Shown one piece after another: positions 1,349 through 53,712 of a stretch of 64,000 bases of DNA. Made by a program: the position numbers and the translations under genes. The stretch lies in the IMG/VR virus record IMGVR_UViG_3300044644_001125, positions 1 to 64,000 of that record; one strand, given 5' to 3'. The first letter of the stretch is position 1; every line of letters begins with the position of its first letter. The notes beneath the pieces were generated by a model. The model was given only the letters and a program-made list of their open reading frames with translations. It was not told the origin of the DNA and searched no databases.

Positions 1349-1975
1349 GTGAGAACTCCCTTAACTGAACATCTGAGTTTTGACCAAGCACACATCGTTC
1401 TTGAACACTCAAATGAAGGTGACCAAAAAGCTTTGCATCTTAACGGTATCTGCATCCAAGGCGATATCAAAAATGCAAATCAACGGGTCTACTCTTCTCA
1501 AGAAATCGGTAAAGCTGTTAAAACTCTTAACGAACAGATCTCAGGTGGCTACTCAGTTTTAGGCGAAGTTGACCACCCAGCAGACTTACGAATTAACCTC
1601 GATAGAGTCAGCCACATGATTACCAAAATGTGGATGGACGGTCCCAACGGCTACGGTAAACTTAAAATTTTACCAACTCCAATGGGTAAACTTATCGAAA
1701 CCATGCTAGAAGCCGGTGTAAAACTGGGAGTTTCAAGTAGAGGGTCTGGTGATGTAGATAACAACGGCTATGTCCAAGGTTTTGAAATCATTACCGTAGA
1801 TATCGTCGCACAACCTAGCGCACCAGGTGCTTACCCAACTCCCGTTTATGAACATATCATGAACGCAGCCGGTGGTAATACCGCTTTACGTATCGCTCAA
1901 GAAGTTCAAGGCGACCCAAAAGCACAGAAATACATCTCAGAGAGCTTGATGCGCATCATCAAGGGCCTGAACTAA
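1349..1975 (+). CDS. gp21: Prohead core protease (T4 gp21-like)
   Basis: NANQRVY, LGEVDHP..LRINLDRVSHMI and LGVSSRGSG motifs; lies upstream of scaffold and capsid genes; GTG start. Confidence 0.93.
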   Translation: MRTPLTEHLSFDQAHIVLEHSNEGDQKALHLNGICIQGDIKNANQRVYSSQEIGKAVKTLNEQISGGYSVLGEVDHPADLRINLDRVSHMITKMWMDGPNGYGKLKILPTPMGKLIETMLEAGVKLGVSSRGSGDVDNNGYVQGFEIITVDIVAQPSAPGAYPTPVYEHIMNAAGGNTALRIAQEVQGDPKAQKYISESLMRIIKGLN

Positions 1976-3099: not shown

Positions 3100-4269
3100 A
3101 TGTCACAATTATTAGAATCACGTTGGTCAGAAACCAAAGAAGCACTTTTGGAAGGCTTACAAGGGAACAAAAGAACTGTTATGTCAACTGTTCTTGAAAA
3201 TACCCGCAAACAATTATCAGAATCTGCAACTGCAGGTGCTACTTCTGCAGGTAACGTTGCAACATTAAACCGCGTTATCTTACCAGTTATTCGTCGTGTT
3301 ATGCCGACTGTTATCGCAAATGAATTAGTTGGTGTACAACCAATGACTGGTCCTGTTGGCCAAATCCACACTCTTCGTGTGCGTTATTCTGATTCATTTA
3401 CTGGTTCAGCTGGTGGTTCAACAACTGCTGGTGACGAAGCATTATCACCATTCAAAATTGCTGAAGGTTACTCAGGTAACACTAACGGTAAAGCTGATGC
3501 AACTGCAGCAAAAGAAGCGGTAGCTGGTAACAAACTAAGCATCCAAATCTTAAAACAAACCGTTGAAGCAAAATCACGTAAATTGTCAGCACGTTGGACT
3601 TTCGAAGCTGCACAAGATGCACAAGCTCAACAAGGAATTGACATCGAAGCAGAAATCATGGCTGCATTGGCACAAGAAATCACTGCTGAGATCGATCAAG
3701 AAATCTTGTCAAGTTTGTCAACTTTAGCTGGTACTAACAACCTTATCGCTTGGAACCAAACTCAAGTTTCTGGTGTTGCTACTTTCGTTGGTGATGAACA
3801 TGCTTCATTGGCTGTTGCTATCAACCGAGTTGCAAACACTATCGCACAACGCACACGTCGTGGTGCTGGTAACTGGGCTGTTGTTTCACCAACTGCTTTA
3901 ACCATTTTACAATCAGCTACTACTTCAGCATTTGCTCGTACTACTGAAGGTACTTTCGAAGCGCCAACCAATACTAAATTTGTTGGTACATTGAACAGTG
4001 CAATGAAGATTTATGTTAATACATACGCAGCTAACGACGATGTATTGATCGGTTATAAAGGTACGACCGAAACTGATTCGGCTGCTTTCTTCTGCCCATA
4101 CATCCCCTTGATGTCAAGCGGCGTGGTACTTGACCCAAATACCTTCGAACCCTGCGTTTCTTTTCTTACCCGTTACGGTTACGCGGAACTCACCAATACT
4201 TCGAGCTCTTTGGGAAATTCTGCCGACTATTTGGGCAAAGTTACTGTTGCACAAGCATCATTCTTCTAA
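3100..4269 (+). CDS. gp23: Major capsid protein (T4 gp23-like)
   Basis: ELVGVQPMTGPVGQIHTLR, KSRKLSARWTFEAAQD, EITAEIDQEI and CPYIPL...FEP..SFLTRYG motifs. Confidence 0.97.
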   Translation: MSQLLESRWSETKEALLEGLQGNKRTVMSTVLENTRKQLSESATAGATSAGNVATLNRVILPVIRRVMPTVIANELVGVQPMTGPVGQIHTLRVRYSDSFTGSAGGSTTAGDEALSPFKIAEGYSGNTNGKADATAAKEAVAGNKLSIQILKQTVEAKSRKLSARWTFEAAQDAQAQQGIDIEAEIMAALAQEITAEIDQEILSSLSTLAGTNNLIAWNQTQVSGVATFVGDEHASLAVAINRVANTIAQRTRRGAGNWAVVSPTALTILQSATTSAFARTTEGTFEAPTNTKFVGTLNSAMKIYVNTYAANDDVLIGYKGTTETDSAAFFCPYIPLMSSGVVLDPNTFEPCVSFLTRYGYAELTNTSSSLGNSADYLGKVTVAQASFF

Positions 4270-19996: not shown

Positions 19997-21408
19997 GGTG
20001 CTAAGTTAAATCCCCAGAATCCAGCAACATATTCACCTTCAAATGCTCTAAGCCATTCTGTACCTTCCCATCTATATTTTATACCTGTTTTCAAGTTTTG
20101 AACATAGGTTGGTACTGTTGCAATTGTTTGATCAAATACTGCATTCCATTTAGTACCAGACCATTCTATGATTGAATTGGTTGGTATAATTGGGTCAGAA
20201 CCATCTAAATTTTTCCAAGCAATTGGTCCGATATAATCTGGACTAACATTTGGTATATCATTAACTGAACCTAACATCAAATATCTTATACCAACTGGTA
20301 TACCAGATTGATTTCCGTACACTTCGACTGGATTGTATTTGGCGGGGTCTATAATCGCATCGATAGTTCCTTTACCAGCCAATCCATTTACTGGGCTTTG
20401 AATAATGGTATTTGCAGGTATTGTATCTGCATCGAATGTAACAATTATTTTAGACGGATCAGTTTCTGATATGGTAAATGTACCAACCATATTGTACCCA
20501 GATGGTTGTTTAAAGTACACTTGGCTTAATGGCGAATAGTTGCCAGTAATATCAATAACAGTATGCCAGTCAATTGCTTTATCTAACATTGCAGTTAAGT
20601 CATAATCATACTGACCACCAGTTGCGGATTTAATCAAGAATACATTAATATCAGCTAATGTAGTAACCACTTGCATATCTGCTGCTTGTTGTTCATATAT
20701 CAATGAACTCAAATCAACGATATCACCGGCATCCGTGAATACGTTACTAATAATAGTTTGAATAATACCAAGTCTTTTTACTTTTGCTGGTGGTGAAATG
20801 TAAATTGGCATTGTAAATTCTAAACTACACACATCGATTTCAGATTCCAAACCTTGTGGTATTTGCCTTGATGAAAACGTAATATTTTTTACATTAACTA
20901 CTGATAAGCTAGTCCAATCAACGAAGTTATCGTTGGTTTGAATTTCCAAACTAGGGTTAAACATACCCAAAATCTGTTCAAGTAATTGCAACTTTTGGTC
21001 AGTATTACTTGTCCAAATGTCTGCTTTCATCGATAACATGAATGGTGTTGGCATTAGTCGTTCAACTGTATATCCACCACCTTGTACATTTTCATATTGC
21101 AGCGTATCACCTGAACCAGTGTATCTTCGTTGTCTAATGTTTATTTTACTAACAAATGTTGAATCTGAAGTTCTATCCCTATCCATTTCTAAACCAGTTA
21201 CATAGCATGATATTCTAGGAACGGTTAGCATTTTGTTTTCAGAATTCTCTTTAATAACACTTGCAACCTGTCTAGTCATATCACCGTACATAACTGGGAT
21301 ATGTTTTTCTTCAGGTGTTGATCCACCCGTTTTATATTTGAATCCAATGAATATACGCATGAACTGCGTTATATATCGTCGTATTTGCCCGTCGTACTGA
21401 TGGTCCAT
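19993..21408 (-). CDS. Tail completion/sheath stabiliser (T4 gp15-like) with C-terminal extension
   Basis: RRYITQFMRIF, PV.YGD, PRIS.Y..GL, MPTPF.L....DIW..N..QKLQLLEQI...FNP motifs. Confidence 0.7.
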   Translation of the reverse strand: MDHQYDGQIRRYITQFMRIFIGFKYKTGGSTPEEKHIPVMYGDMTRQVASVIKENSENKMLTVPRISCYVTGLEMDRDRTSDSTFVSKINIRQRRYTGSGDTLQYENVQGGGYTVERLMPTPFMLSMKADIWTSNTDQKLQLLEQILGMFNPSLEIQTNDNFVDWTSLSVVNVKNITFSSRQIPQGLESEIDVCSLEFTMPIYISPPAKVKRLGIIQTIISNVFTDAGDIVDLSSLIYEQQAADMQVVTTLADINVFLIKSATGGQYDYDLTAMLDKAIDWHTVIDITGNYSPLSQVYFKQPSGYNMVGTFTISETDPSKIIVTFDADTIPANTIIQSPVNGLAGKGTIDAIIDPAKYNPVEVYGNQSGIPVGIRYLMLGSVNDIPNVSPDYIGPIAWKNLDGSDPIIPTNSIIEWSGTKWNAVFDQTIATVPTYVQNLKTGIKYRWEGTEWLRAFEGEYVAGFWGFNLAP

Positions 21409-22670
21409 TAATTGTCTGCCTCTGGTCTTAATGCTTTTGATAAACTTTGTTTTTCTTTGATGACGTGACCATCAATAACATGGGTTGTGTCGTTATTAAT
21501 AAACGTACCACGCTGTGTTAATCTGACATCTTTACCTTCATATTCAGCACCTGGTTTAGTATCACTATATCCCAAGTTAGTCACTGTCATTCTTACAGAA
21601 TCTTCCATTTTAACCCACTTGTTATTCGTGAATTGGAATAATCTGTTAGGTGTATAATCAGTTCGTAAACAATACTGCCCATCGACAGGCGCGATCGGGA
21701 ATACAATACCGGCAGTGAACTGGGCACCATTTGGTGGAATACCATCACCTATTAAATATCCGTTATAGCCTGGTTTATTTGGATTTTGGAACATAGTAGA
21801 AGTCGTTGGATTTACATACACTGGATTGCCATTAGTATCAAATAAAGGATTGCCTGCTTTATCAGTAGCTTGAGTTTGAATAGTAGTATCTAAAGTATCG
21901 GAATTGGCTTGTACAATTTCAACTAATCCATATCTATCTTGTTGAATTGTATAGTATGGCGTTATATCATACCCACTCAATGGAAGATCTTTATCTGCTT
22001 GGTCTAATACCGCATGTGTGATTTGCATTTCTTTTTGGTAAGTTGACATGATATCTCTTAATGTCAATCCGTCATCATTTTCATCATCGGCTAATCCATC
22101 TAAAATATCTTTAAATTCTTGACTATCAACTAATGGTTTGCACTTAGCTCTGTATAAATGTGGGTACCAAAGAGCAGAAAAACCTTGACTAGCACGGCTA
22201 ACTTCTTCTACAACATAGAATCGTTTTAACGCATACTGTAGATCATTTAGGGCGTACTCATCTTTTAGATGTGGTAATTCGATAACATCACCTGATATAA
22301 TCTTTCTACCTAACTTTTCTACTGTATCATTAATATGAAAACTAATGAATATAGTATCATTCTGTAAGAATAAACCAAACTGACTTAAGTTAAAATCGAT
22401 GTCTTGTACATTATAATGTCCACGGAGTACATAAACTGATGGGTCGTATTTTCTATCACGGTTTTCTAAGAACAGCAAATCTTGAATCTGGGTTGGATCC
22501 GTAGTTGAATATGCAGGTGTTGTCGGTGTATTTTCTGCTGAATCACCTGGTCCAAGATAGCGGTGGACAAGCACATCCACACCACCAACTTGGAACATTT
22601 CCCAAATGGTTTTGTCTATGAACTTATAATCGCTTCCTTTCTCGGGTCTGTATAGTGAAAGTCTCGGCAC
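21408..22670 (-). CDS. Neck/head closure protein (T4 gp14-like)
   Basis: GTG start with GGAG RBS; FLENRDRKY, DFNLSQFGLFL, LGRKIISGDVIELP motifs; divergent from gp13-like gene. Confidence 0.72.
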   Translation of the reverse strand: MPRLSLYRPEKGSDYKFIDKTIWEMFQVGGVDVLVHRYLGPGDSAENTPTTPAYSTTDPTQIQDLLFLENRDRKYDPSVYVLRGHYNVQDIDFNLSQFGLFLQNDTIFISFHINDTVEKLGRKIISGDVIELPHLKDEYALNDLQYALKRFYVVEEVSRASQGFSALWYPHLYRAKCKPLVDSQEFKDILDGLADDENDDGLTLRDIMSTYQKEMQITHAVLDQADKDLPLSGYDITPYYTIQQDRYGLVEIVQANSDTLDTTIQTQATDKAGNPLFDTNGNPVYVNPTTSTMFQNPNKPGYNGYLIGDGIPPNGAQFTAGIVFPIAPVDGQYCLRTDYTPNRLFQFTNNKWVKMEDSVRMTVTNLGYSDTKPGAEYEGKDVRLTQRGTFINNDTTHVIDGHVIKEKQSLSKALRPEADN

Positions 22671-45075: not shown

Positions 45076-45104
45076 TTGACATACTAAAACAAAACACATA
45101 TACT
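45076..45104 (+). promoter_or_regulatory. Sigma70-type early promoter
   Basis: TTGACA (45076-45081), 17 bp, TATACT (45099-45104). Confidence 0.88.
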
Positions 45105-45319: not shown

Positions 45320-45348
45320 TTGACAAACTAAAACACTTACTTTATACT
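45320..45348 (+). promoter_or_regulatory. Sigma70-type promoter for the gp32-like gene
   Basis: TTGACA (45320-45325), 17 bp, TATACT (45343-45348). Confidence 0.88.
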
Positions 45349-45488: not shown

Positions 45489-46499
45489 ATGGCATCTTTA
45501 GCTGAAATCCGCGCAAAACTTCAAGCATCACAAAACAACCAATCTAACAGTGGTTCTAATGGCGAACCAAGCGTTATCTATCCACACTGGAACATTACCG
45601 ATGGTAATGAAACAACAATCCGATTCTTACCGGATGCAGACACAACCAATGATTTCTTCTGGGTTGAAAAACAAATGATTAGACTTCCCTTCGCTGGCAT
45701 TAAAGGCGAGGCAGATTCACGTCCAGTTGTTGTTCAAGTTCCATGTATTGAGATGTATGATGCAAAAGCATACTGCCCAATTTTAACCGAGGTTCGTGGT
45801 TGGTTCAAAGACAAATCATTAGAAGAAATGGGTCGTAAGTATTGGAAAAAACGTACGTTCTTAGCACAAGGATTTGTTGTTGAAGATGGCTTGAAAGAAG
45901 AAAACCCACCTGAAAACAAAATCCGTAGATTCATTATCAGTCCACAAATCTTTGGTTTGATTAAATCTGCCTTATTAGATCCAGAGTTAGATGAATTACC
46001 AACTGATTACTTACGCGGTCTTGACTTCCGTATTTGCAAAACCTCAAAAGGTGGATTTGCTGATTACTCAACTTCTAAATGGAGCCGTCGTGAACGTGCT
46101 TTAAATGAAGAAGAATTGCAAGCAATTGCTGACCATGGGTTATTCAACTTAGCTGACTTCTTACCTAAACGTCCTGGTGAAGTTGAGTTGAAAGTTATTA
46201 AAGAAATGTTTGAAGCATCTGTTGTTGGTGAAGCCTATGATGTTGAAAGATGGGGTCAATACTATCGTCCAAATGGAATTCAAGCACCTACTACAGAAAC
46301 TCGTGTAGTTGCTGCACCTGCGGCATCAGTTGCTGATTCTGTTGTTTCTGCTCCTTTATCATCAGCTGATGATTTACCATGGGAAACTCCTGCAGCACCT
46401 TCTTATGCAACACCAGCGGTTGCACCTGAAACATCTGCTGAAGGCGCAAGTCGTGCACAAGACATTCTTAAAATGATTCGTGACCGTCAAACGGCTTAA
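45489..46499 (+). CDS. gp32: Single-stranded DNA-binding protein (T4 gp32-like)
   Basis: IRFLPD, FFWVE, V.VPC.EMY...CPIL.EVR.WFKD, GRKYWKKR, GGFADYSTSKW motifs. Confidence 0.93.
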   Translation: MASLAEIRAKLQASQNNQSNSGSNGEPSVIYPHWNITDGNETTIRFLPDADTTNDFFWVEKQMIRLPFAGIKGEADSRPVVVQVPCIEMYDAKAYCPILTEVRGWFKDKSLEEMGRKYWKKRTFLAQGFVVEDGLKEENPPENKIRRFIISPQIFGLIKSALLDPELDELPTDYLRGLDFRICKTSKGGFADYSTSKWSRRERALNEEELQAIADHGLFNLADFLPKRPGEVELKVIKEMFEASVVGEAYDVERWGQYYRPNGIQAPTTETRVVAAPAASVADSVVSAPLSSADDLPWETPAAPSYATPAVAPETSAEGASRAQDILKMIRDRQTA

Positions 46500-46509
46500 T
46501 CAGTAGTAT

Positions 46510-46544
46510 AGGGTGTGCAGGGTAATTCCTGTACACCCTTTTTT
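46510..46544 (+). terminator. Rho-independent terminator
   Basis: AGGGTGTGCAGG-GTAATT-CCTGTACACCCT followed by TTTTT. Confidence 0.85.
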
Positions 46545-46563
46545 CGTTTATAGAGGAGAGGTA

Positions 46564-48060
46564 ATGAAAGCATTTGACGTAAGTAAATTTCGTAAAACAT
46601 TAACCAAGTCTATCGAAGGTCTTGGTGTTGGTTTCAATGACCCAACTGATTGGATTAGTTGTGGTAACTATGCACTTAACTATTTGATTAGTGGTGATTT
46701 CAATAAAGGTATTCCATTAGGTAAGGTTACAGTCTTTGCCGGGGAATCTGGTTGCTTACCAGCATTGGCTAAGGTCGATGTCAAGTACACAATTGATGAT
46801 GTTGAGGTTGCTGAAACGGTGACAGTTTCTAAACTTCGTGAATTGGTTCATGATTCAGCTGTTGAAAAATTAAAAATTTCAACACCAGATGATTATCAAC
46901 TCGTTGGCCAGTGGTTCGACAAAGGGTCATTAGCTGTTGTTCGTATTTCAACTGCTACTAGAAGTGCAGAATCAGCAACAAGCCACTTGTATCAGTTGGA
47001 AGATGGTGAATGGGTTGCTGCTGGAGCATTGACCATCGGTGATTCGGTGATGACAGTTGATGGTGCTGAAGAAATCGTTAGTAAAGAATTCTTGGCAGAT
47101 GCTGAGTGTTACGATTTCGAGGTGTTACATCCAAACCACCGTTATTGGAGTGATGGTTTCTCAAGTCACAACAGTGGAAAGTCATATATTTGTTCAGGTA
47201 ACATTGTTAAAAATGCACAGGAACAAGGTATCTTTGTTGTATTGATTGATACAGAAAACGCGTTGGATGAGGCATGGCTTCATGCGTTGGGTGTTGATAC
47301 GGCTGAAGATAAACTTATGCGTTTAAGTATGTCGATGATTGATGACGTAGCTAAGACTATTTCTGAATTCATGAAAGAAATTAAAGGAATGGATGAAGCA
47401 GATAGACCTAAAGTCCTGTTTGTAATTGACTCACTTGGTATGCTACTAACGCCAGTTGACGTGAACCAATTCGATAGTGGTGATCTCAAAGGTGATATGG
47501 GTCGTAAACCAAAAGCATTAATGGCATTAGTTCGTAATAGTGTTAATTTGTTTGGTAATTATAACGTCGGTATGGTGTGTACTAACCACACATATGACTC
47601 TCAAGACCCCTACAATCCTGATCCGCGTATAAGTGGGGGTTCGGGTTTTGTGTTTGCTTCAAGTATTGTTGTGGCAATGAAGAAGCTGAAACTAAAAGAG
47701 GATGAAGACGGTGCAAAAACCAAAACTGTCCAGGGTATTCGTTCTGGTTGTAAGATCATGAAAACTCGTTACGCTCAACCATTCACTGACATCGAAGTTC
47801 AAATTCCATACAATGAAGGTATGAGTTTATATAGCGGCATGTTTAGCTTACTGGAAGGTAAGAATCTTATAACTAAGGATGGAAATAGATACTGCTACGT
47901 TGATACTGCTGGAGTTACACATAAGTATTTCCGTAAAGAGTGGAATCGCAATGAGAATGGCATTTTGGATTTAGTTATCTCGGAATTTGCCAAAAAAGTT
48001 GAAGCAGTAGAAGTTGCTGCAGAATTGGCAGATGATTTTATTGAAGAGGATCTCGATTAG
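46564..48060 (+). CDS. uvsX: RecA-like recombinase UvsX with mini-intein
   Basis: ATG at 46564 after AGGAG; GIPLGKVTVFAGESG|SGKS Walker A; LIDTENALD, VLFVIDSLG, GDMGRK, KTRY. Confidence 0.93.
   Translation: MKAFDVSKFRKTLTKSIEGLGVGFNDPTDWISCGNYALNYLISGDFNKGIPLGKVTVFAGESGCLPALAKVDVKYTIDDVEVAETVTVSKLRELVHDSAVEKLKISTPDDYQLVGQWFDKGSLAVVRISTATRSAESATSHLYQLEDGEWVAAGALTIGDSVMTVDGAEEIVSKEFLADAECYDFEVLHPNHRYWSDGFSSHNSGKSYICSGNIVKNAQEQGIFVVLIDTENALDEAWLHALGVDTAEDKLMRLSMSMIDDVAKTISEFMKEIKGMDEADRPKVLFVIDSLGMLLTPVDVNQFDSGDLKGDMGRKPKALMALVRNSVNLFGNYNVGMVCTNHTYDSQDPYNPDPRISGGSGFVFASSIVVAMKKLKLKEDEDGAKTKTVQGIRSGCKIMKTRYAQPFTDIEVQIPYNEGMSLYSGMFSLLEGKNLITKDGNRYCYVDTAGVTHKYFRKEWNRNENGILDLVISEFAKKVEAVEVAAELADDFIEEDLD
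46753..47172 (+). mobile_element. Mini-intein (140 aa) in the UvsX Walker A
   Basis: Starts CLPA, block F CYDFEV, ends SSHN followed by Ser; no endonuclease domain. Confidence 0.9.
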
Positions 48061-48069
48061 TTCGTACCA

Positions 48070-48100
48070 AAAAACCCGTCTTTTTACGAGGCGGGTTTTT
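48070..48100 (+). terminator. Probable terminator after uvsX
   Basis: AAAAACCCGTCT ... AGGCGGGTTTTT hairpin. Confidence 0.75.
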
Positions 48101-48152
48101 CAAAATGATACATAAGGTCAGTTAACATTTTTAATTAAGGAGAAAACAACCC

Positions 48153-48368
48153 ATGAAAGAAGCATTAATCACTGACATTTGGACTGTATTAGTTGAGCAC
48201 TTATCAGAAAGGCAACGCAAGAATGCGGCAGTTGAGTATGTAAATGTATTACAAGACCACGGGATTAAAGAAACGACGTTAGAAAGTTTAGTGGGTGTAG
48301 ACCCATACTTAGACTTTGCATTAGAAGCAGTTATGGATGACGAAGACGAAGATTACGACGACGAATAA
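48153..48368 (+). CDS. Small acidic hypothetical protein
   Basis: 71 aa with AAGGAG RBS, between uvsX and uvsY. Confidence 0.7.
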   Translation: MKEALITDIWTVLVEHLSERQRKNAAVEYVNVLQDHGIKETTLESLVGVDPYLDFALEAVMDDEDEDYDDE

Positions 48369-48377
48369 GAGGCGGAA

Positions 48378-48836
48378 ATGACCAACTGGTATGACAAGGT
48401 TTCACGGGATATAACGAATGTTCCACACGCAATTACCCATTATCGGTCAGAATTAGGTTCTGCCAAGGTAGACGTTAAGATTTCTGGTAGTATTGAACGT
48501 GCGGCAGCTGCAATGCCAGGGATTGTTGAAACACGTTTTTGCCAGTTACAAGAGATTGAGGCTATATTGGAATACTTGAACATTTGTTTGAAGCAGATGA
48601 AAAGTCAACATTTCCAAAAGTATCTTGAAACATATCAACGTTCTTTGAGTAGTAGAGATTGTGATAGATATGTAGATGGAGAACAAGACGTGGTTGATTT
48701 TGAGATTTTAATCAATGACGTTGCCTTACTCAGAAATCAGTATCTTGGTGTTATCAAAGGATTGGATATTAAGCAATGGCAGTTATCCAATATTGTTAAG
48801 TTAAGAACTGCTGGATTGGATGATGCGTCTATCTAA
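48378..48836 (+). CDS. uvsY: Recombination mediator UvsY
   Basis: QLQEIEAILEYL, F.KYLE.Y.R.LS, YVDGE, RNQYLGVIKGLD.KQWQL; downstream of uvsX. Confidence 0.85.
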   Translation: MTNWYDKVSRDITNVPHAITHYRSELGSAKVDVKISGSIERAAAAMPGIVETRFCQLQEIEAILEYLNICLKQMKSQHFQKYLETYQRSLSSRDCDRYVDGEQDVVDFEILINDVALLRNQYLGVIKGLDIKQWQLSNIVKLRTAGLDDASI

Positions 48837-48874
48837 AAGATAATTGATACACTTTGTATCCACCATTGACACGG

Positions 48875-48899
48875 AAGCCCACTCTCGAGTGGGCTTTTT
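48875..48899 (+). terminator. Rho-independent terminator
   Basis: AAGCCCACT-CTCG-AGTGGGCTTTTT. Confidence 0.85.
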
Positions 48900-48948
48900 G
48901 TTACCTACAAATTTCAATAAATATAGGAAAAACTACGAGGTTACATCC

Positions 48949-49632
48949 ATGAGAATAACAGATATCATCGGCGAATCAGCAATCGATGAAGCACCACTCC
49001 CACCAGATTGGGATAAATCGGTATACACACCAAAAACATCATACAAGAAAAGAATTGAATATGCGGTAGCACGTGCCCAAAAGATGGGTAAAGGATCATC
49101 GAGAACTGCTTTTGATATTGAATACGAAGGTAGACCAACTGTTCTTAAAGTTGCGCATAATGTAAAAGGAATGGCACAGAACAAAGAAGAAGCAGAAATA
49201 CTAGATGATGGTTATGTGCAAGATTTGGGAATTACTATCCCAATTATCGATTATGATGAAGAGCATGATGAACCGGTTTGGATTCATACAGAAAAAGCAC
49301 AGAAAGCTACTGAAAAACAATTGTGCAACTTGATGAAATGTGGTACTTTACGTTTATTGGTTGCTATGGCATTTGCTAGTACTGGTAAGAAAGGTGGAAC
49401 CTTAAGTCACGAAGAAGTTATTCGTGAGTTGAAATCAGACCGCTTTAAGTACACAGACGAAGATGTTGAGTTGTGTGAAGAATATGCACAGGCATTAACT
49501 GAACTTGCAGTTAATTTTGATGTAGGTTTATGGGATTTTGTAAGAACAGCCAACTGGGGTTTATTTAATGGTAAACCTGTTGTAATTGATGTTGGTTATA
49601 CTGATGCAGTTCACGCGGCACACTATCGATGA
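48949..49632 (+). CDS. Protein-kinase-like fold protein, possibly virion-packaged
   Basis: ATG at 48949 after ATAAATA (48917-48923); GKGSSRTAF, VLKVA, QNKEE, DFVRTANWG, PVVIDVG. Confidence 0.6.
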   Translation: MRITDIIGESAIDEAPLPPDWDKSVYTPKTSYKKRIEYAVARAQKMGKGSSRTAFDIEYEGRPTVLKVAHNVKGMAQNKEEAEILDDGYVQDLGITIPIIDYDEEHDEPVWIHTEKAQKATEKQLCNLMKCGTLRLLVAMAFASTGKKGGTLSHEEVIRELKSDRFKYTDEDVELCEEYAQALTELAVNFDVGLWDFVRTANWGLFNGKPVVIDVGYTDAVHAAHYR

Positions 49633-50366
49633 ATACAATAGTAATAGTAACTGGTGGCTTTGATCCGATTCATTCTGGTCACATAGAATACTTGAAGGCT
49701 GCGAAGTCATTAGGTGATATTCTTGTTGTTGGTGTGAATAGTGATGAATGGCTTGTTCGTAAGAAAGGTCAGGCTTTCATGCCACTTGACGAGCGGGTAT
49801 CTATCATTCAGAATCTAAAGATGGTTGATGATTGTATTGTATTTGATGATACGAATGGTGATGCAATTGATGCTATCAATCGAGTCAAAAATTTATACCC
49901 AGATAACCGGTATATCTTTGCTAACGGTGGTGATAGAACGGCTAGTAATATCCCAGAGATGTCAGTCAAAAATGTAGAATTTGCATTTGGTGTTGGTGGT
50001 ACTAATAAAAAGAATTCAAGTTCATGGATATTAACTGAGTGGAAATCACCCAAGACCGAAAGACCATGGGGATATTATCGAGTATTGCATGATGTTCCTG
50101 GAATAAAAGTTAAAGAATTAACAGTAAATCCCCAGTCATCATTATCAATGCAACGACATGAATCTCGGTCTGAGTATTGGATGGTAGCTGAAGGTACGGC
50201 AACTGTTACTAGTTCTGATTCGATTTCTACATTGGTTACACATGATGAATATCACGTACCTGAGCATACTTGGCATCAATTGAGTAATATCACAGATAGA
50301 CCACTAAGAATAATTGAAATACAATACGGTGAAAGTTGTGTTGAAGAGGATATTGAAAGAAAATGA
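49629..50366 (+). CDS. Cytidylyltransferase (RfaE-II/TagD-like) fused to a type II mannose-6-phosphate-isomerase-like cupin
   Basis: TGGFDPIHSGH HxGH motif, ANGGDRT; RPWGYYRVL, LSMQRH..RSEYW, IIEIQYG. Confidence 0.88.
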   Translation: MNTIVIVTGGFDPIHSGHIEYLKAAKSLGDILVVGVNSDEWLVRKKGQAFMPLDERVSIIQNLKMVDDCIVFDDTNGDAIDAINRVKNLYPDNRYIFANGGDRTASNIPEMSVKNVEFAFGVGGTNKKNSSSWILTEWKSPKTERPWGYYRVLHDVPGIKVKELTVNPQSSLSMQRHESRSEYWMVAEGTATVTSSDSISTLVTHDEYHVPEHTWHQLSNITDRPLRIIEIQYGESCVEEDIERK

Positions 50367-51046
50367 TTACAGTATTCATTGGGTATGATCCACGAGAAGC
50401 AATAGCTTATCATGTATGTGCTAATAGTATTATTAGGCATAGTTCAAAGCCAGTTGCATTAGTTCCATTGGCTTTAGATAATCTAAAAGATTATGCAGAA
50501 ACGCACGACGATGGTAGTAATCAATTCATTTATAGTCGATTCTTAGTTCCTAGTTTAATGGATTATGAAGGATGGGCAATCTTTATCGATGGTGATATGT
50601 TACTACGTGAAGATATTGCTAAACTCTGGGAGTTGCGAGATCCGACAAAAGCAGTTCAATGCGTTCATCATAATTATGAAACTAAGATGACTACCAAGTA
50701 CTTGGGTTCAGTTAATCAAAATTATCCACGTAAGAATTGGTCTAGTGTGGTAATGTGGAATTGTGCACATCCAGCCAATGCTGTATTAACCTCTGGTTTA
50801 ATACAAGCCTCCTCTGGTGCATTTTTACATCGTTTTACTTGGTTAACTGATGATTTGATTGGTGAATTGCCAGTTGAATGGAATTGGTTACCTGATGAAT
50901 TTGGTGCTAATCCTGATGCTAAACTTCTACACTATACACTTGGAACGCCTTGTTTCCATGATTTTGCACTAACTCCAATGGCAGACGAATGGCACAGAGA
51001 AAGAATGTTAACAAACTACTCGACTCAAGTAAATGCAATTTCTTAG
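50363..51046 (+). CDS. GT-A fold glycosyltransferase (GT8-like)
   Basis: IFIGYD.RE, FIYSRFLVP, DGDML, RKNWSSV, LP.EWNWL, LLHYT.G.P. Confidence 0.85.
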   Translation: MITVFIGYDPREAIAYHVCANSIIRHSSKPVALVPLALDNLKDYAETHDDGSNQFIYSRFLVPSLMDYEGWAIFIDGDMLLREDIAKLWELRDPTKAVQCVHHNYETKMTTKYLGSVNQNYPRKNWSSVVMWNCAHPANAVLTSGLIQASSGAFLHRFTWLTDDLIGELPVEWNWLPDEFGANPDAKLLHYTLGTPCFHDFALTPMADEWHRERMLTNYSTQVNAIS

Positions 51047-51815
51047 TAAGAATCTTCAAGATGAGTACGTGGGTATGCTTGCGACTAGCCATAATCATGA
51101 TGTGGTTGGATATCATGTTTTTGATTACGATGCTAGTACAGACCCTCTTGTCATCCGAGGTATTCTCAAACATAAACTTATCAAGCGTTGTTGGGCGGAT
51201 AATCGCGATTTCTACTACATAGATAGTGGGTATTTTGGAAATAGCAAGTATAATAAGAATCCATTGGGTAATAAGTTATATCATCGAATTGTAAAGAATG
51301 ATTTGCAACATGGTGCTGTAGTTGAAAGACCTGCGGATCGATGGTTGAAACTAGGATTGACACTTTCTAATTGGCGAAATACTGGTAGAAATATACTAGT
51401 TGCTGCACCGGATGAAAAGCCTTGTAAGTTTTATGGCGTCGATAAAGATACTTGGATTGCTGAAACAGTTGCTACTATTAAACAACATACGGATAGACCA
51501 GTGGTTGTTCGGGATAGAGCAAAGTTACGCAGTGAGAGAATAACAAATACTTTACAAGAAGCGTTATCAGATACGTTTGCATTAGTTACGTTTAATAGCG
51601 TAGCAGCCACTGAAGCAATTATGTATGGAATACCGGCATTTACCTTAGTGAACAATGCGGCTAGTCCAGTTTCATTACAAGATTTAAGCAAAATAGAAAC
51701 ACCTTATTATCCAACTATGGATGAACGTTACGCATGGGCTTGTCACTTAGCCTATGGTCAATTTCACGTCACTGAACTAAAAGATGGTTCAGCCCTACGA
51801 ATTTTAGAAATATGA
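51033..51815 (+). CDS. Capsule-polysaccharide-biosynthesis-like (KpsS/KpsC-type) transferase
   Basis: YYIDSGYF, VVVR, LVTFNS.AA.EA...GIP, W...LAY.QF. Confidence 0.6.
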   Translation: MQFLSKNLQDEYVGMLATSHNHDVVGYHVFDYDASTDPLVIRGILKHKLIKRCWADNRDFYYIDSGYFGNSKYNKNPLGNKLYHRIVKNDLQHGAVVERPADRWLKLGLTLSNWRNTGRNILVAAPDEKPCKFYGVDKDTWIAETVATIKQHTDRPVVVRDRAKLRSERITNTLQEALSDTFALVTFNSVAATEAIMYGIPAFTLVNNAASPVSLQDLSKIETPYYPTMDERYAWACHLAYGQFHVTELKDGSALRILEI

Positions 51816-52798
51816 AGATATTAGTTAGTATTGCATCTGGTGCAAATAATACTGAACGTAATGTATTGCGTTCATTCTATGAAGGTATTGAACGGTATTA
51901 CTTTCAGTTATTTGCGGTTAATAATCAACGCATGTTGAAAAAACAGCATGGTATTGATTTGCGGATGAGTTACGATACTGAAATAGAATCGTGTGATATT
52001 GCTGTGCAGTTTGGTACGGTTAAACCTAGATCAGCCGAACATCATGTAACACGGCAAAGTATTCAAAAGAAGGCTGAACAAGTAATCTATATTGAAACTC
52101 CACTATTGGGTAGAACTATTGTAGAAGGTAGTAAACATCAATATTATCGAGTTGGTATCAATGGATTTATGAATAATGATGGTATATTCTACGGTGATTC
52201 AATTGATAAAACTCGTTTACCAGAAATGCGCAACCATCTTACTATCCCAGAATTTGCTGGTTGGAAAGATCATTCGGTGGGTAATATATTGGTGTTGCTG
52301 CAATTACCAGGCGATGCAAGTTTACGTGGCCAAAAGATGAGTGAGTGGCTATTAGAAACTCTATCATCTATAAGAGAAATAACCAATAGACCAATCGTAG
52401 TTCGATTTCACCCAGCAATGAGTGTTAAAGGTCGTGCTGAATTTTATAGTGAAATTGGCGATGTGTTATTCAAGAATTATCAAAATATAACTTGGTCTAA
52501 TGGATTAGATCGAAGTTTACAGGAGGAGTTATCGGATGCTGGAGTTTGCGTTACATATACCAGTGGATCAGCAATTGATGCAGTGCTGGCAGGAGTACCC
52601 GTTATTGCAATGGATGAAGGAAACATGGGATATCCAATTTCAAGTCATCGTATTAGTGAATTGTTAAATCCAAAGAAAGTGGGTAAACTTGAAATAAACC
52701 GATGGGTTGCTCAGTTAGCAAATAGTCAATGGTCTGAATCTGAGATGATTGAATCTAAAGTTTGGCAGCATTTGTTGCCACTGATTGGTGATTTGTGA
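51812..52798 (+). CDS. Capsule-polysaccharide-biosynthesis-like transferase
   Basis: LLQLPGDASL, IVVRFHP, VTYTSGSAIDAVLAGVP, LA.SQW. Confidence 0.65.
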   Translation: MKILVSIASGANNTERNVLRSFYEGIERYYFQLFAVNNQRMLKKQHGIDLRMSYDTEIESCDIAVQFGTVKPRSAEHHVTRQSIQKKAEQVIYIETPLLGRTIVEGSKHQYYRVGINGFMNNDGIFYGDSIDKTRLPEMRNHLTIPEFAGWKDHSVGNILVLLQLPGDASLRGQKMSEWLLETLSSIREITNRPIVVRFHPAMSVKGRAEFYSEIGDVLFKNYQNITWSNGLDRSLQEELSDAGVCVTYTSGSAIDAVLAGVPVIAMDEGNMGYPISSHRISELLNPKKVGKLEINRWVAQLANSQWSESEMIESKVWQHLLPLIGDL

Positions 52799-53712
52799 AA
52801 GTAGCAATCTATCATAGGTCAGTTCCTAATGCCAAGAACCAAGAGAAAGTTGATTTATTAAATCACTTTGCTACTGGAGTTGCGCGTAATGGTGATGCGG
52901 TTATTAATGTAAATGATTTGATGTATCAATCCACTGATGTTGGTGTTATACAAGGTTGGGTTAGTAATGATATTAAAAGACCTCATTTGAGATTGCGAAA
53001 TACCGTAGTTGAAGAACAAATCAAATCTGGTAAGTATGCGGTTGCAGTTGATAGCAACTTGTTTCTTTATAACGATACTACAAATGCGTTACATTATTTA
53101 AGATATAGTTTTAACGGTATATTTCCAAACACAGGAATCTACTGCGATTCTGTGATAGATCCTACTAGATGGCAGAAGATAAGTAAGAACTTAAACTTAA
53201 GTCTAAAAGATAATAGAACTACCGGTAATCATATCTTAATTTGCATGCAACGGAATGGTGGTTGGAGCATGGGTGGTGCGGATGTTCAAGATTGGGCTAT
53301 TTCTACAATAAATGAATTAAGAAAGTACACCGATAGACCAATTGTTATTAGACCACATCCAGGTGATAAAGCAACGAAGGAGTTGCTTAATTCTACAAAT
53401 GCAACGAATAAGTTGCGTGGTTTGACTATCAGTGGCAATCCAAATCTAAAAGATGATTTAATCAATTGTTGGGCAGTGGTGAATTGCAATTCTAGTCCAG
53501 TAGTTGGTGCTGCTATTGAGGGATTCCCTATCTTCGTTACTGACCCTGATAAAAGTCAATGTAGAGAAGTAGCAAACTTGAGTTTATCTGATATAGAAAA
53601 CCCATTACTACCAGATAGGCAGCAATGGGTTGAAAGACTATCCATGTTTCACTGGAACTTTGATGAGTTAAAGTCTGGTGAATGTTGGGCTCATATGCGT
53701 AGTTTTATTTGA
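52795..53712 (+). CDS. Capsule-polysaccharide-biosynthesis-like transferase
   Basis: GTG start; ILICMQ, IVIRPHPG, VVN.NSSP.V.AAIEG.P, L..FHW. Confidence 0.65.
   Translation: MKVAIYHRSVPNAKNQEKVDLLNHFATGVARNGDAVINVNDLMYQSTDVGVIQGWVSNDIKRPHLRLRNTVVEEQIKSGKYAVAVDSNLFLYNDTTNALHYLRYSFNGIFPNTGIYCDSVIDPTRWQKISKNLNLSLKDNRTTGNHILICMQRNGGWSMGGADVQDWAISTINELRKYTDRPIVIRPHPGDKATKELLNSTNATNKLRGLTISGNPNLKDDLINCWAVVNCNSSPVVGAAIEGFPIFVTDPDKSQCREVANLSLSDIENPLLPDRQQWVERLSMFHWNFDELKSGECWAHMRSFI

What the first reader, a model, noticed from the sequence alone, without database searches (positions are those of the whole stretch)
48949..49632. Late, possibly capsid-packaged protein-kinase-like enzyme
The ORF shows kinase-fold landmarks in order: Gly loop GKGSSRTAF, VLKVA lysine, helix-C glutamate QNKEE, catalytic-loop-like DFVRTANWG and metal-binding IDVG. 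It has a late promoter and a capsid-cargo-like N-terminus (MRITDIIGES...IDEA). A kinase injected with the DNA could disable host defences before any phage gene is expressed, unlike the early-expressed T7 gp0.7. It could alternatively phosphorylate sugars for the adjacent island.
Basis: partly seen in the sequence, partly recalled or inferred. Interest (0 to 1): 0.6.

Follow-up and report, generated by a model that had tools for sequence, protein, structure and literature searches.

The report
Late phage kinase with capsid-targeting leader
A 327-kb T4-like jumbo phage makes, late in infection, a stripped-down protein-kinase-fold enzyme whose first nine residues are a tag shared by nine other proteins of the phage and resemble the T4 signal that loads proteins into the capsid, so it is probably delivered into the next host with the DNA.

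Summary
A confident AlphaFold model (pLDDT 88.7) matches only protein-kinase-like folds. The Gly-loop, Lys67, Glu81, Asp196, Asn202 and Asp214 are invariant in 50 aligned homologues. No Pfam model matches; the family is PHROG 4301 ("unknown"), virus-only, with more than 270 metagenomic members.

The "late promoter" holds as a variant, [C/A]TAAATA[C/T]. This motif is about 16-fold enriched upstream of genes, precedes the tail sheath, large terminase and adaptor genes, and lies 32 nt before this ATG. The phage has a gp55-like sigma factor.

The strongest new result concerns the N-terminus. The leader M-R-x-x-E/D-h-h-x-E/D occurs exactly 10 times in the six-frame translation of the genome, always at a gene start (0.14 expected). 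It resembles the T4 capsid-targeting sequence, and the phage has a gp21-type prohead protease. Other carriers include a second, T7-gp0.7-like kinase and an ART-PolyVal-like protein. Related phages use their own leader on the kinase and its neighbours.

The sugar-kinase alternative is weak: the glycosyltransferase island is adjacent only in this phage and one close relative. Packaging, cleavage, activity and substrate remain untested.

The parts
48867..48903 (+). Intrinsic terminator hairpin ending the gp32-UvsX-UvsY unit, followed by a T run
   Evidence: RNA fold dG -19.4 kcal/mol, z = -4.8, 0 of 200 shuffles fold as well. The hairpin is conserved in the close relative L021.
48917..48924 (+). 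Late-promoter-like motif ATAAATAT, 32 nt before the ATG
   Evidence: 7-mers ATAAATA and CTAAATA are 15-16x enriched in upstream regions. About 60 genes carry the motif, mostly 25-45 nt before the start, including tail sheath 24418, TerL 32647, adaptor 22722 and virion protein 21408-22670. Relative L021 has CTAAATAC at the same place.
48937..48940 (+). Ribosome-binding site GAGG, 8 nt before the ATG
   Evidence: Read from the sequence.
48949..48975 (+). Shared N-terminal leader MRITDIIGE (residues 1-9), a putative capsid-targeting sequence
   Evidence: The pattern M[KR]xx[DEQN]hhx[DE] occurs 10 times in the six-frame translation of the 327-kb genome, all at starts of ORFs of 82 aa or more, against 0.14 expected. 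The codons differ between copies, so the peptide is what is conserved. 87 of 120 family members carry it.
48976..48990 (+). Residues 10-14 (SAIDE), ending in the family-invariant Glu14. Putative prohead-protease site I-D-E | A-P-L-P.
   Evidence: E14, P16 and P18 are invariant. 114 of 120 members carry h-x-E-[AMVTS]-P-[LM]-P. Residues 1-15 have pLDDT below 50.
48991..49629 (+). Predicted mature kinase-fold domain (A15-R227), ending 13 residues after the DFG-equivalent Asp, so no C-terminal subdomain
   Evidence: AF2 model; fold matches.
49087..49104 (+). Gly-rich loop G47-K-G-S-S-R52
   Evidence: G47, G49, S50 and R52 are invariant. The loop lies between strands 44-48 and 52-59.
49147..49149 (+). 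Lys67, the strand-3 lysine of VLKVA
   Evidence: Invariant.
49189..49191 (+). Glu81 on the helix-C equivalent (helix 72-86)
   Evidence: Invariant.
49534..49554 (+). Catalytic-loop equivalent, D196 to N202 (DFVRTAN)
   Evidence: D196, N202 and W203 are invariant. The spacing is D+6, one residue longer than the usual D+5.
49588..49590 (+). Asp214 of IDVG, the DFG-equivalent metal-binding Asp
   Evidence: D214 and G216 are invariant.
49629..53712 (+). Downstream genes in the same orientation: nucleotidyltransferase+cupin, a GT8-like gene and three glycosyltransferase-like genes. The first start overlaps the kinase stop (ATGA).
   Evidence: ORF list; Pfam PF01467+PF01050, PF01501 and weak DUF6716/AGT matches. 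Adjacency is kept only in the 83%-identical relative L021.
1349..1975 (+). T4 gp21-type prohead protease, the enzyme expected to remove the leader
   Evidence: PF03420 Peptidase_S77, E 4.1e-24, above the cut-off.
3100..4269 (+). gp23-type major capsid protein whose N-terminal propeptide is rich in h-x-E sites
   Evidence: PF07068, E 3e-96; N-terminus read.

Best explanation
The gene encodes a minimal protein-kinase-fold phosphotransferase, about 213 residues when mature. It has a complete ATP-binding and catalytic residue set but nothing after the DFG-equivalent Asp. It is transcribed from a T4-type late promoter variant. Its first nine residues are a phage-wide leader that works like the T4 capsid-targeting sequence: it directs the protein into the scaffolding core of the prohead. 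The gp21-type prohead protease then cuts after Glu, most likely at the invariant Glu14, leaving a mature protein that starts with APLP. The enzyme stays in the DNA-filled head and is ejected into the next host with the genome. There it would phosphorylate host (or host-defence) proteins before any phage gene is expressed, in the manner of T4 Alt but with the chemistry of T7 gp0.7. Shown: ORF, fold, conserved catalytic residues, promoter-motif class, leader sharing, and presence of the protease. Inferred: packaging, cleavage, ejection, activity and substrate.
For: Fold: AF2 pLDDT 88.7. The Foldseek PDB top 50 are all kinase-like (APH(4)-Ia 1.7e-4, CK2, APH(2''), PRPK, Ark1). VIA-align gives ULK4 Z 9.1, Rio2 8.8 and APH(2'') 8.6. 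BFVD returns small jumbo-phage proteins and T7-like protein kinases. Catalytic residues are invariant. Late class; gp55-like sigma; the early promoter/5'UTR cassette is absent; the motif is conserved in relative L021. Leader: 10 of 10 genome-wide occurrences are at gene starts, against 0.14 expected. The carriers are effector-like: a second kinase matching phrog_15752 (T7 gp0.7 type) at E 1.6e-7, and GP88, DUF6321 and weak metallopeptidase matches, plus an ART-PolyVal-like protein by language-model features, 0.95. None is a replication protein. Seven of the ten lie behind a late motif directly or through an operon. The leader tracks the phage rather than the cargo. Slicko01 has MKIYNLYSTLLE on the kinase and MKIDNLYESLLE on its neighbour. 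The 364-kb contig L017 has MRAFEFLGE, MRAEEFLFE and MRATEFITE, the last on a GH19 enzyme. L022 has five leader genes in a row. In 32 of 120 homologues a GNAT or DUF6934 domain is inserted between the leader and the h-x-E|APLP site. The T4 CTS is MKTYQEFIAE and is cut once (PMC8442874). T4-type proteases cut after Glu, and T4 CTS propeptides are 10-20 aa (PMC5694885). A gp21-type protease is present here and in XacN1 and Slicko01. Precedent for predicted injected, C-terminally truncated kinases: PMC5512222.
Against: There are no virion proteomics for this phage. The gel-band proteome of XacN1 does not list the homologue ORF170. XacN1's virion chitinase has no obvious leader. Leader sharing in XacN1 and Slicko01 is seen only for two adjacent genes. 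The gene is translationally coupled to a glycosylation island, which suggests a metabolic role. The best PDB matches include small-molecule kinases (APH, NahK, MTR kinase). The D196-N202 spacing is one residue longer than canonical. A late motif shows transcription class only by analogy.
Confidence: 0.55

Rival explanations
1. The kinase is made late but is not packaged. The shared leader has another job, such as efficient translation initiation, binding to an assembly chaperone, or targeting to another intracellular site. The kinase would then act in the producing cell on host or phage proteins during assembly or lysis.
For: Only sequence evidence links the leader to the capsid. XacN1 virion proteomics does not report the homologue. 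The leader region is AT-rich at the 5' end of the mRNA.
Against: The codons of the leader vary while the peptide is kept. The pattern ends in hydrophobic-x-Glu like T4 CTS and gp21 sites. The leader is retained at the extreme N-terminus even when a whole domain is inserted behind it. Its carriers are of the classes known from injected polyvalent proteins: kinase, ART, peptidase, GNAT.
Confidence: 0.25
2. It is a small-molecule (sugar anomeric) kinase that supplies sugar-1-phosphate to the nucleotidyltransferase+cupin enzyme encoded immediately downstream. This would feed the glycosyltransferases that decorate virion proteins or DNA.
For: The stop and start codons overlap (ATGA at 49629) and no promoter motif lies between the genes. 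PF01467+PF01050 and GT-like genes follow. Foldseek hits include APH enzymes, N-acetylhexosamine 1-kinase and methylthioribose kinase. The arrangement is kept in the 83%-identical relative.
Against: In seven more distant contexts no sugar gene is adjacent: XacN1, Slicko01, L017, L019, L020, L022 and the P0030 contig. The recurrent neighbours are instead Endonuclease_NS, GNAT, 5'-nucleotidase, GP88 and other leader-bearing proteins. The downstream sugar genes have no leader. A leader and Glu-site propeptide are unexplained for a metabolic enzyme.
Confidence: 0.12
3. It is a catalytically dead kinase-fold protein that serves as a structural or scaffolding component of the head.
For: The catalytic loop has a non-canonical D-x5-N spacing. 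No sequence model of an active kinase family matches.
Against: Every residue needed for ATP binding and phosphotransfer is invariant over sequences down to 50% identity. That pattern is not expected of a pseudokinase.
Confidence: 0.05

Closest known systems
T4 internal proteins IPI-III and Alt, loaded through the capsid-targeting sequence (CTS)
   Same: A short N-terminal leader (T4: MKTYQEFIAE; here MRITDIIGE, family consensus MRAxEFIxE) is shared by unrelated late proteins. It ends in hydrophobic-x-Glu. A gp21-type protease and a gp23-type capsid are present. Alt is a packaged host-modifying enzyme.
   Different: The cargo is a kinase, which is not known among T4 cargo. The leader is 9 rather than 10 residues. 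A second invariant Glu site follows 5 residues later. In many homologues an extra enzyme domain sits between the leader and that site. Packaging here is inferred, not shown.
Kinase-PolyVal (PF18762), the kinase domain of phage and conjugative-element polyvalent proteins (Iyer et al. 2017, PMC5512222)
   Same: A protein-kinase core that has lost the whole C-terminal subdomain but keeps its active-site residues. It is predicted to be delivered with the DNA and co-occurs with ART, GNAT and peptidase effector domains. Language-model feature similarity is 0.93.
   Different: No HMM match. The protein stands alone with its own leader instead of being one domain of a giant protein. It comes from T4-like jumbo phages, not Bacteroidetes or Verrucomicrobia (pro)phages.
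T7 gp0.7 protein kinase family (phrog_15752, PF27024)
   Same: A small phage kinase of similar size. BFVD structural matches to T7-like 'protein kinase' entries (IME278 E 5.6e-6, Q19, SK1). Feature similarity to a cluster carrying Phage_T7_kinase.
   Different: No PHROG or Pfam sequence match for this protein. gp0.7 is an early gene made after entry, whereas this gene sits behind a late motif and carries a leader. A different protein of this phage (G000 112494-113210) is the one that matches phrog_15752.
Aminoglycoside and sugar anomeric kinases of the APH fold (APH(4)-Ia, APH(2''), NahK, MTR kinase)
   Same: These are the best Foldseek PDB E-values (1.7e-4 to 2e-3). The D...N...D catalytic arrangement matches. 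Some homologues are fused to a GNAT, which recalls AAC-APH enzymes.
   Different: TM-scores are only 0.35-0.40 with rmsd around 15 A. The helical substrate-binding subdomain after the catalytic region is absent. There is no conserved link to sugar or antibiotic genes.
Minimal atypical kinases: RIO1/RIO2, Bud32/PRPK, archaeal Ark1
   Same: Similar size and no activation segment. VIA-align Z 8.8 (Rio2), 7.9 (Rio1, Ark1) and 7.5 (Bud32).
   Different: No sequence similarity and no ribosome or tRNA-modification context. The Z values lie in the range the tool calls middling.

Membership tests
Protein-kinase-like (PKL) fold superfamily | Bilobal fold: N-lobe beta-sheet plus helix C, and a helical C-lobe carrying the catalytic loop | tested here: met
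   AF2 pLDDT 88.7. All top Foldseek PDB hits (prob 1.00, E down to 1.7e-4) and VIA-align hits (Z up to 9.1) are PKL folds. ESM Atlas row 4 is a Kdo/Pkinase cluster with TM 0.50.
Protein-kinase-like (PKL) fold superfamily | Gly-rich loop, strand-3 Lys, helix-C Glu, catalytic Asp and Asn, and metal-binding Asp, in that order | tested here: met
   G47/G49, K67, E81, D196, N202 and D214 are invariant in 50 and 16 sequences. D-to-N spacing is 6 instead of 5. The 3D contacts (Lys-Glu pair) could not be measured.
Protein-kinase-like (PKL) fold superfamily | ATP-dependent phosphotransfer | not testable with these tools
   Needs a biochemical assay.
T4-type CTS cargo (internal proteins, Alt) | A roughly 10-residue N-terminal leader shared by otherwise unrelated proteins of the same phage | tested here: met
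   10 proteins carry it, against 0.14 expected, and the pattern occurs nowhere else in six frames.
T4-type CTS cargo (internal proteins, Alt) | The leader ends in a hydrophobic-x-Glu protease site, and a gp21-type prohead protease is encoded | tested here: met
   I-G-E9 and I-D-E14 are present, and E14 is invariant. PF03420 is found at 1349-1975. Cleavage after Glu is documented in PMC5694885.
T4-type CTS cargo (internal proteins, Alt) | Late expression together with head genes | tested here: inconclusive
   Late-type motif 32 nt upstream, the same motif before structural genes, and a gp55-like sigma. No transcript data.
T4-type CTS cargo (internal proteins, Alt) | Presence of the processed protein in virions and ejection into the host | not testable with these tools
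   The XacN1 gel-band proteome does not list ORF170. That is uninformative at that depth.
Kinase-PolyVal (PF18762) | Match to the family HMM | tested here: not met
   No hit for P0001, for any of 50 homologues at E up to 10, or anywhere in the genome. Only language-model similarity of 0.93 with 166 shared features, below the tool's 170 guide.
Kinase-PolyVal (PF18762) | Loss of the C-terminal kinase subdomain with active-site residues kept (PMC5512222) | tested here: met
   The protein ends 13 residues after D214, with a single short helix 219-226.
T7 gp0.7 kinase family (phrog_15752) | Match to the family profile | tested here: not met
   The PHROG scan gives only phrog_4301. hhalign of A1 against the phage's own phrog_15752-like protein aligns only the leader. 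PF27024 is not in the Pfam copy at hand.
T7 gp0.7 kinase family (phrog_15752) | Early expression after DNA entry | tested here: not met
   The gene has a late motif and no early TTGACA-N17 cassette.
APH-fold small-molecule or sugar kinases | Conserved genomic link to the substrate pathway | tested here: not met
   Sugar genes are adjacent only here and in the 83%-identical relative, and are absent in 7 other contexts.
APH-fold small-molecule or sugar kinases | Helical substrate-binding subdomain beyond the catalytic core | tested here: inconclusive
   Nothing follows D214, but a variable helical region (residues 120-190) precedes the catalytic loop.

The most novel reading that the evidence does not exclude
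T4-like jumbo phages of the XacN1 kind carry a modular cargo-tagging system. Any enzyme given the 9-residue leader plus a Glu site is loaded into the head as a separately encoded effector. Examples seen here are two kinases, an ART, a peptidase, GH19, GNAT, GP88 and DUF6321. This would be an unbundled counterpart of polyvalent proteins. In the GNAT-kinase and DUF6934-kinase fusions, the prohead protease would cut a two-enzyme polyprotein into separate cargo. The kinase would be the first packaged, injected protein kinase of a bacterial virus, acting on host targets before transcription starts.
Probability: 0.4. Interest if true: 0.75.

Novelty: new variant of a known kind. Interest (0 to 1): 0.62.

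Why it matters
Phage kinases such as T7 gp0.7 and its relatives are early gene products, and some are reported to counter host defences (abstract of PMC12345140). A kinase already present in the virion would act before any transcription, at the moment when the incoming genome is most exposed. The shared leader also gives a simple sequence rule for listing the probable packaged effectors of a whole clade of uncultured jumbo phages. Ten are listed here, most with no known function. It also suggests a natural tag for loading foreign proteins into large capsids. The kinase family itself has more than 270 members, is virus-only, and has no Pfam model, so it deserves a family definition.

Tried and rejected
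- Sequence family searches on the kinase gave nothing useful. Pfam and NCBIfam returned only a sub-threshold PglW N-lobe hit, E 0.0028. A profile search of PDB sequences found no kinase at E up to 10.
- The T4 consensus TATAAATA has 0 matches in the window. The exact 12-mer around the motif is unique. The generic sigma-70/terminator scan was at chance level and missed the uvsY terminator.
- megablast of the region against cultured phages found no match.
- hhalign of the family against the phage's second kinase aligned only the leader.
- The XacN1 paper and its supplement do not list ORF170 among virion proteins. The packaged chitinase ORF272 and lipase ORF279 show no leader. This gives no experimental support either way.
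- DNA patterns for the leader in Slicko01 found only the kinase and its neighbour.
- Pfam scans of leader-bearing neighbours from other phages gave nothing significant.
- The AF2 model of a GNAT-kinase fusion was poor, with pLDDT 59 from 13 close sequences. Only the N-terminal domain (residues 10-95) and part of the kinase C-lobe were confident, and the linker 100-143 was below 50, so no conclusion was drawn.
- PF27024 is not in the Pfam copy at hand.
- Not run: the large representative-protein search (fold and family were already settled, and it is costly), complex prediction (no defined partner), and sequencing-run searches (uncultured phage).

Full report
**What is there.** The window is the first 64 kb of a 327-kb virus record (IMG/VR, about 92% complete). 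It is a T4-like jumbo phage.
- Near the start lies a head module: a gp21-type prohead protease (PF03420, 1349-1975), a scaffold-like protein and a gp23-type major capsid protein (PF07068, 3100-4269).
- Further on lie tail sheath, adaptor and large terminase genes.
- Then comes a gp32 / UvsX / UvsY block at 45489-48836.
- The finding is the next gene, ATG 48949 to TGA 49632, 227 aa.
- A strong hairpin with a T run (48867-48903, dG -19.4, z -4.8) separates it from uvsY.
- A GAGG lies 8 nt before the ATG.
- The longer TTG-initiated frame from 48844 runs through the terminator and is not supported. Met1 is invariant in homologues.

**The observation.**
- The word search found more than 270 relatives, nearly all unnamed metagenomic proteins.
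- Cultured carriers are Xanthomonas jumbo phages XacN1 and Xoo-sp13 and two Alishewanella myophages.
- In 50 aligned homologues (50-88% identity), G47, G49, S50, R52, K67, N71, K73, Q77, N78, E81, D87, D101, D103, E115, D196, N202, W203, D214 and G216 are invariant.
- The same residues are invariant in fusion proteins.

**Fold.** AlphaFold2 on this alignment gives mean pLDDT 88.7 and pTM 0.83. Only residues 1-15 are disordered.
- The element order is that of a protein kinase: strand, Gly-loop, strand, Lys strand, helix C, two strands, a helical C-lobe, catalytic loop, two short strands, then the metal-binding Asp.
- Foldseek against the PDB returns only kinase-like folds: APH(4)-Ia at 1.7e-4, then CK2, APH(2''), IRAK, RAF, PRPK and Ark1.
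- VIA-align against 48,161 representative chains puts ULK4 (Z 9.1), Rio2 (8.8) and APH(2'') (8.6) on top, with kinases filling nearly the whole list. These Z values are middling, so what carries weight is that the list consists almost entirely of kinase-like folds.
- In BFVD the nearest named proteins are T7-like phage protein kinases. The closest overall are small uncharacterised proteins of jumbo phages such as RaK2 and CBB.
- ESM Atlas clusters of this shape are 98-100% viral.
- No Pfam, NCBIfam or PDB sequence model matches. PHROGs files the protein under phrog_4301, function unknown.
- The protein ends 13 residues after D214, so the whole post-DFG subdomain of ordinary protein kinases is missing.
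- The D196-to-N202 spacing is one residue longer than usual.

**Late promoter.** The T4 consensus TATAAATA does not occur in the window at all. A k-mer survey of 251 upstream regions of the whole genome shows two clean promoter classes.
- *First class.* [C/A]TAAATA[C/T] is 15-16-fold enriched and usually lies 25-45 nt before the start codon. It precedes the tail sheath (24418), large terminase (32647), head-tail adaptor (22722), a virion structural protein (21408-22670, minus strand) and many others.
- *Second class.* TTGACA-N17-TAnAnT followed by a conserved 5' leader sequence precedes about 30 small genes at 76-99 kb. This looks like an early-gene cassette.
- The kinase has ATAAATAT 32 nt upstream and nothing of the early kind.
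- The 83%-identical relative has CTAAATAC at the same position.
- The genome encodes a gp55-like late sigma factor (E 4.2e-9 to T4 gp55).

Late expression is therefore well supported by analogy, though not by transcript data.

**The N-terminus.** This is the main new result.
- The pattern Met-Lys/Arg-x-x-acidic/amide-hydrophobic-hydrophobic-x-acidic occurs exactly ten times in the six-frame translation of all 327 kb. All ten are at the start of an ORF of 82-397 aa. From the pattern's internal frequency, 0.14 such N-termini are expected.
- The codons differ between copies, so the peptide is what is conserved.
- The other nine proteins are unrelated to one another:
  - a second minimal kinase that matches the T7 gp0.7 PHROG (E 1.6e-7);
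  - a GP88-domain protein;
  - a DUF6321 protein;
  - a weak metallopeptidase-like protein;
  - four short proteins with no significant family match;
  - a 196-aa protein that language-model features place with ART-PolyVal ADP-ribosyltransferases (0.95, 204 shared features).
- None of the ten is a replication or metabolic enzyme.
- Seven of the ten lie behind a late motif, directly or through an upstream overlapping gene.

**The leader compared with T4.**
- The T4 capsid-targeting sequence is MKTYQEFIAE. It is shared by the otherwise diverse internal proteins and is cut off once in the prohead (PMC8442874; PMC3012670).
- T4-type prohead proteases cut after Glu, and T4 propeptides are 10-20 residues long (PMC5694885).
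- The consensus of the kinase family's own N-terminus, MRAxEFIxE, shares the EFIxE core with T4.

**The leader in other phages.** The leader goes with the phage, not with the cargo.
- In Alishewanella phage Slicko01 the kinase begins MKIYNLYSTLLE followed by APLP. The gene upstream, an unrelated protein, begins MKIDNLYESLLE.
- In a 364-kb metagenomic phage, the kinase, the next gene and a GH19 enzyme all begin MRA-x-EF.
- In a 185-kb contig, five leader genes lie close together around the kinase.
- Of 120 family members, 87 match the strict leader. 114 have hydrophobic-x-Glu directly before the invariant Pro-Leu-Pro.
- In 32 members, a GNAT or DUF6934 domain is inserted between the leader and this site. 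A targeting tag followed by a protease-separable polyprotein would produce this layout.
- XacN1 and Slicko01 also encode the gp21-type protease.

**The sugar island.**
- The kinase stop overlaps the start of a nucleotidyltransferase+cupin gene. A GT8-like gene and three glycosyltransferase-like genes follow.
- The arrangement is kept in the 83%-identical relative.
- Sugar genes are absent next to the kinase in XacN1, Slicko01 and five more distant metagenomic contexts.
- The neighbours that recur there are Endonuclease_NS, GNAT, 5'-nucleotidase, GP88 and other leader-bearing proteins.
- The sugar genes themselves carry no leader.

I rate the sugar-kinase reading at about 0.12.

**Comparison with what is known.** Three precedents frame the finding.
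- T4 loads IPI-III and the ADP-ribosyltransferase Alt through a CTS. The present case looks like the same mechanism with a different leader and a kinase as cargo.
- Iyer et al. 2017 (PMC5512222) predicted that polyvalent proteins of phages are injected with the DNA. They described in them a kinase clade that has lost the C-terminal subdomain but keeps its active site, alongside ART, GNAT and peptidase domains. The truncation and the company of domains are the same here. The Pfam model of that clade does not match, and the protein stands alone.
- T7 gp0.7 is the functional model for a host-directed phage kinase. It is an early gene and is not a sequence relative of this protein.

I found no paper that describes this family or a leader-tagged packaged kinase. 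The library is not exhaustive.

**Verdict.**

| Claim | Estimate |
|---|---|
| Kinase fold | about 0.95 |
| Active enzyme | about 0.85 |
| Late class | about 0.8 |
| Leader acts as capsid-targeting propeptide | about 0.6 |
| Host-protein substrate, given packaging | about 0.5 |

The finding is a new variant of a known kind: CTS-type capsid cargo, with a novel Pfam-less kinase family as the cargo.

Noticed in passing
G000 (own genome) 70975-71340, 72026-73219, 111705-112424(-), 112494-113210, 113535-114341(-), 125452-125802(-), 144846-145106, 162440-163030(-), 250984-251232: Nine further genes share the leader MR[IML]x[ED]hhx[ED]. Among them are a second minimal kinase (phrog_15752, T7 gp0.7 type), a GP88-domain protein, a DUF6321 protein, a weak metallopeptidase-like protein and an ART-PolyVal-like protein. 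Three of them sit side by side at 111.7-114.3 kb.
   Followed up: partly
window 46753-47172 (within the uvsX ORF 46513-48060): A 140-aa mini-intein-like insertion (Cys at its first residue, His-Asn at its end, Ser as the next residue) splits the Walker A motif of the UvsX recombinase (GESG | SGKS). There is a weak PT-HINT Pfam match.
   Followed up: partly
G000 about 76000-99200, minus strand: About 30 small genes each carry the same cassette: TTGACA-N17-TAnAnT, then CACCTTAACAAAGCACTACGGAGTAAA, then the ATG. It is a repeated early promoter plus 5'UTR module, reminiscent of T4 early-gene cassettes.
   Followed up: partly
window 49629-53712: Late-operon sugar island: a cytidylyltransferase-like domain fused to a mannose-6-P-isomerase-type cupin, a GT8-like protein, and three DUF6716/AGT-like putative glycosyltransferases. 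XacN1 is reported to have glycosylated virion proteins (PMC5852040), so the target could be virion proteins or DNA.
   Followed up: no
window 45076-45104 and 45320-45348: Two identical near-consensus sigma-70 promoters (TTGACA-17-TATACT) lie in the long intergenic region before gp32.
   Followed up: no
G000 250984-251232 versus window 3100-4269: The 82-aa leader protein continues after its leader with SAGATSAG. The same string follows a Leu-Ser-Glu site in the capsid protein's N-terminal region (SATAGATSAG). It may be a small protein that mimics the capsid protein's processed N-terminus.
   Followed up: no
window, whole: The T4 late consensus TATAAATA is absent (0 matches against 7.2 expected), whereas ATAAATA and CTAAATA are strongly enriched upstream of genes.
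   Followed up: yes
L020 (306-kb contig) 1-121 and L017 4072-7494: Relatives carry LPD29 and a 1140-aa DUF6321 protein close to the kinase. Polyvalent-protein-type domains therefore lie beside the solo leader-tagged effectors.
   Followed up: no
L019 (NCBI GCA_043956695.1, contig of 1.14 Mb): One homologue lies on a 1.1-Mb contig among phage-like genes (a tRNA synthetase, Endonuclease_NS, a T4_Y16D-like protein with the leader). The contig could be a very large phage, a prophage region or a chimeric assembly.
   Followed up: no
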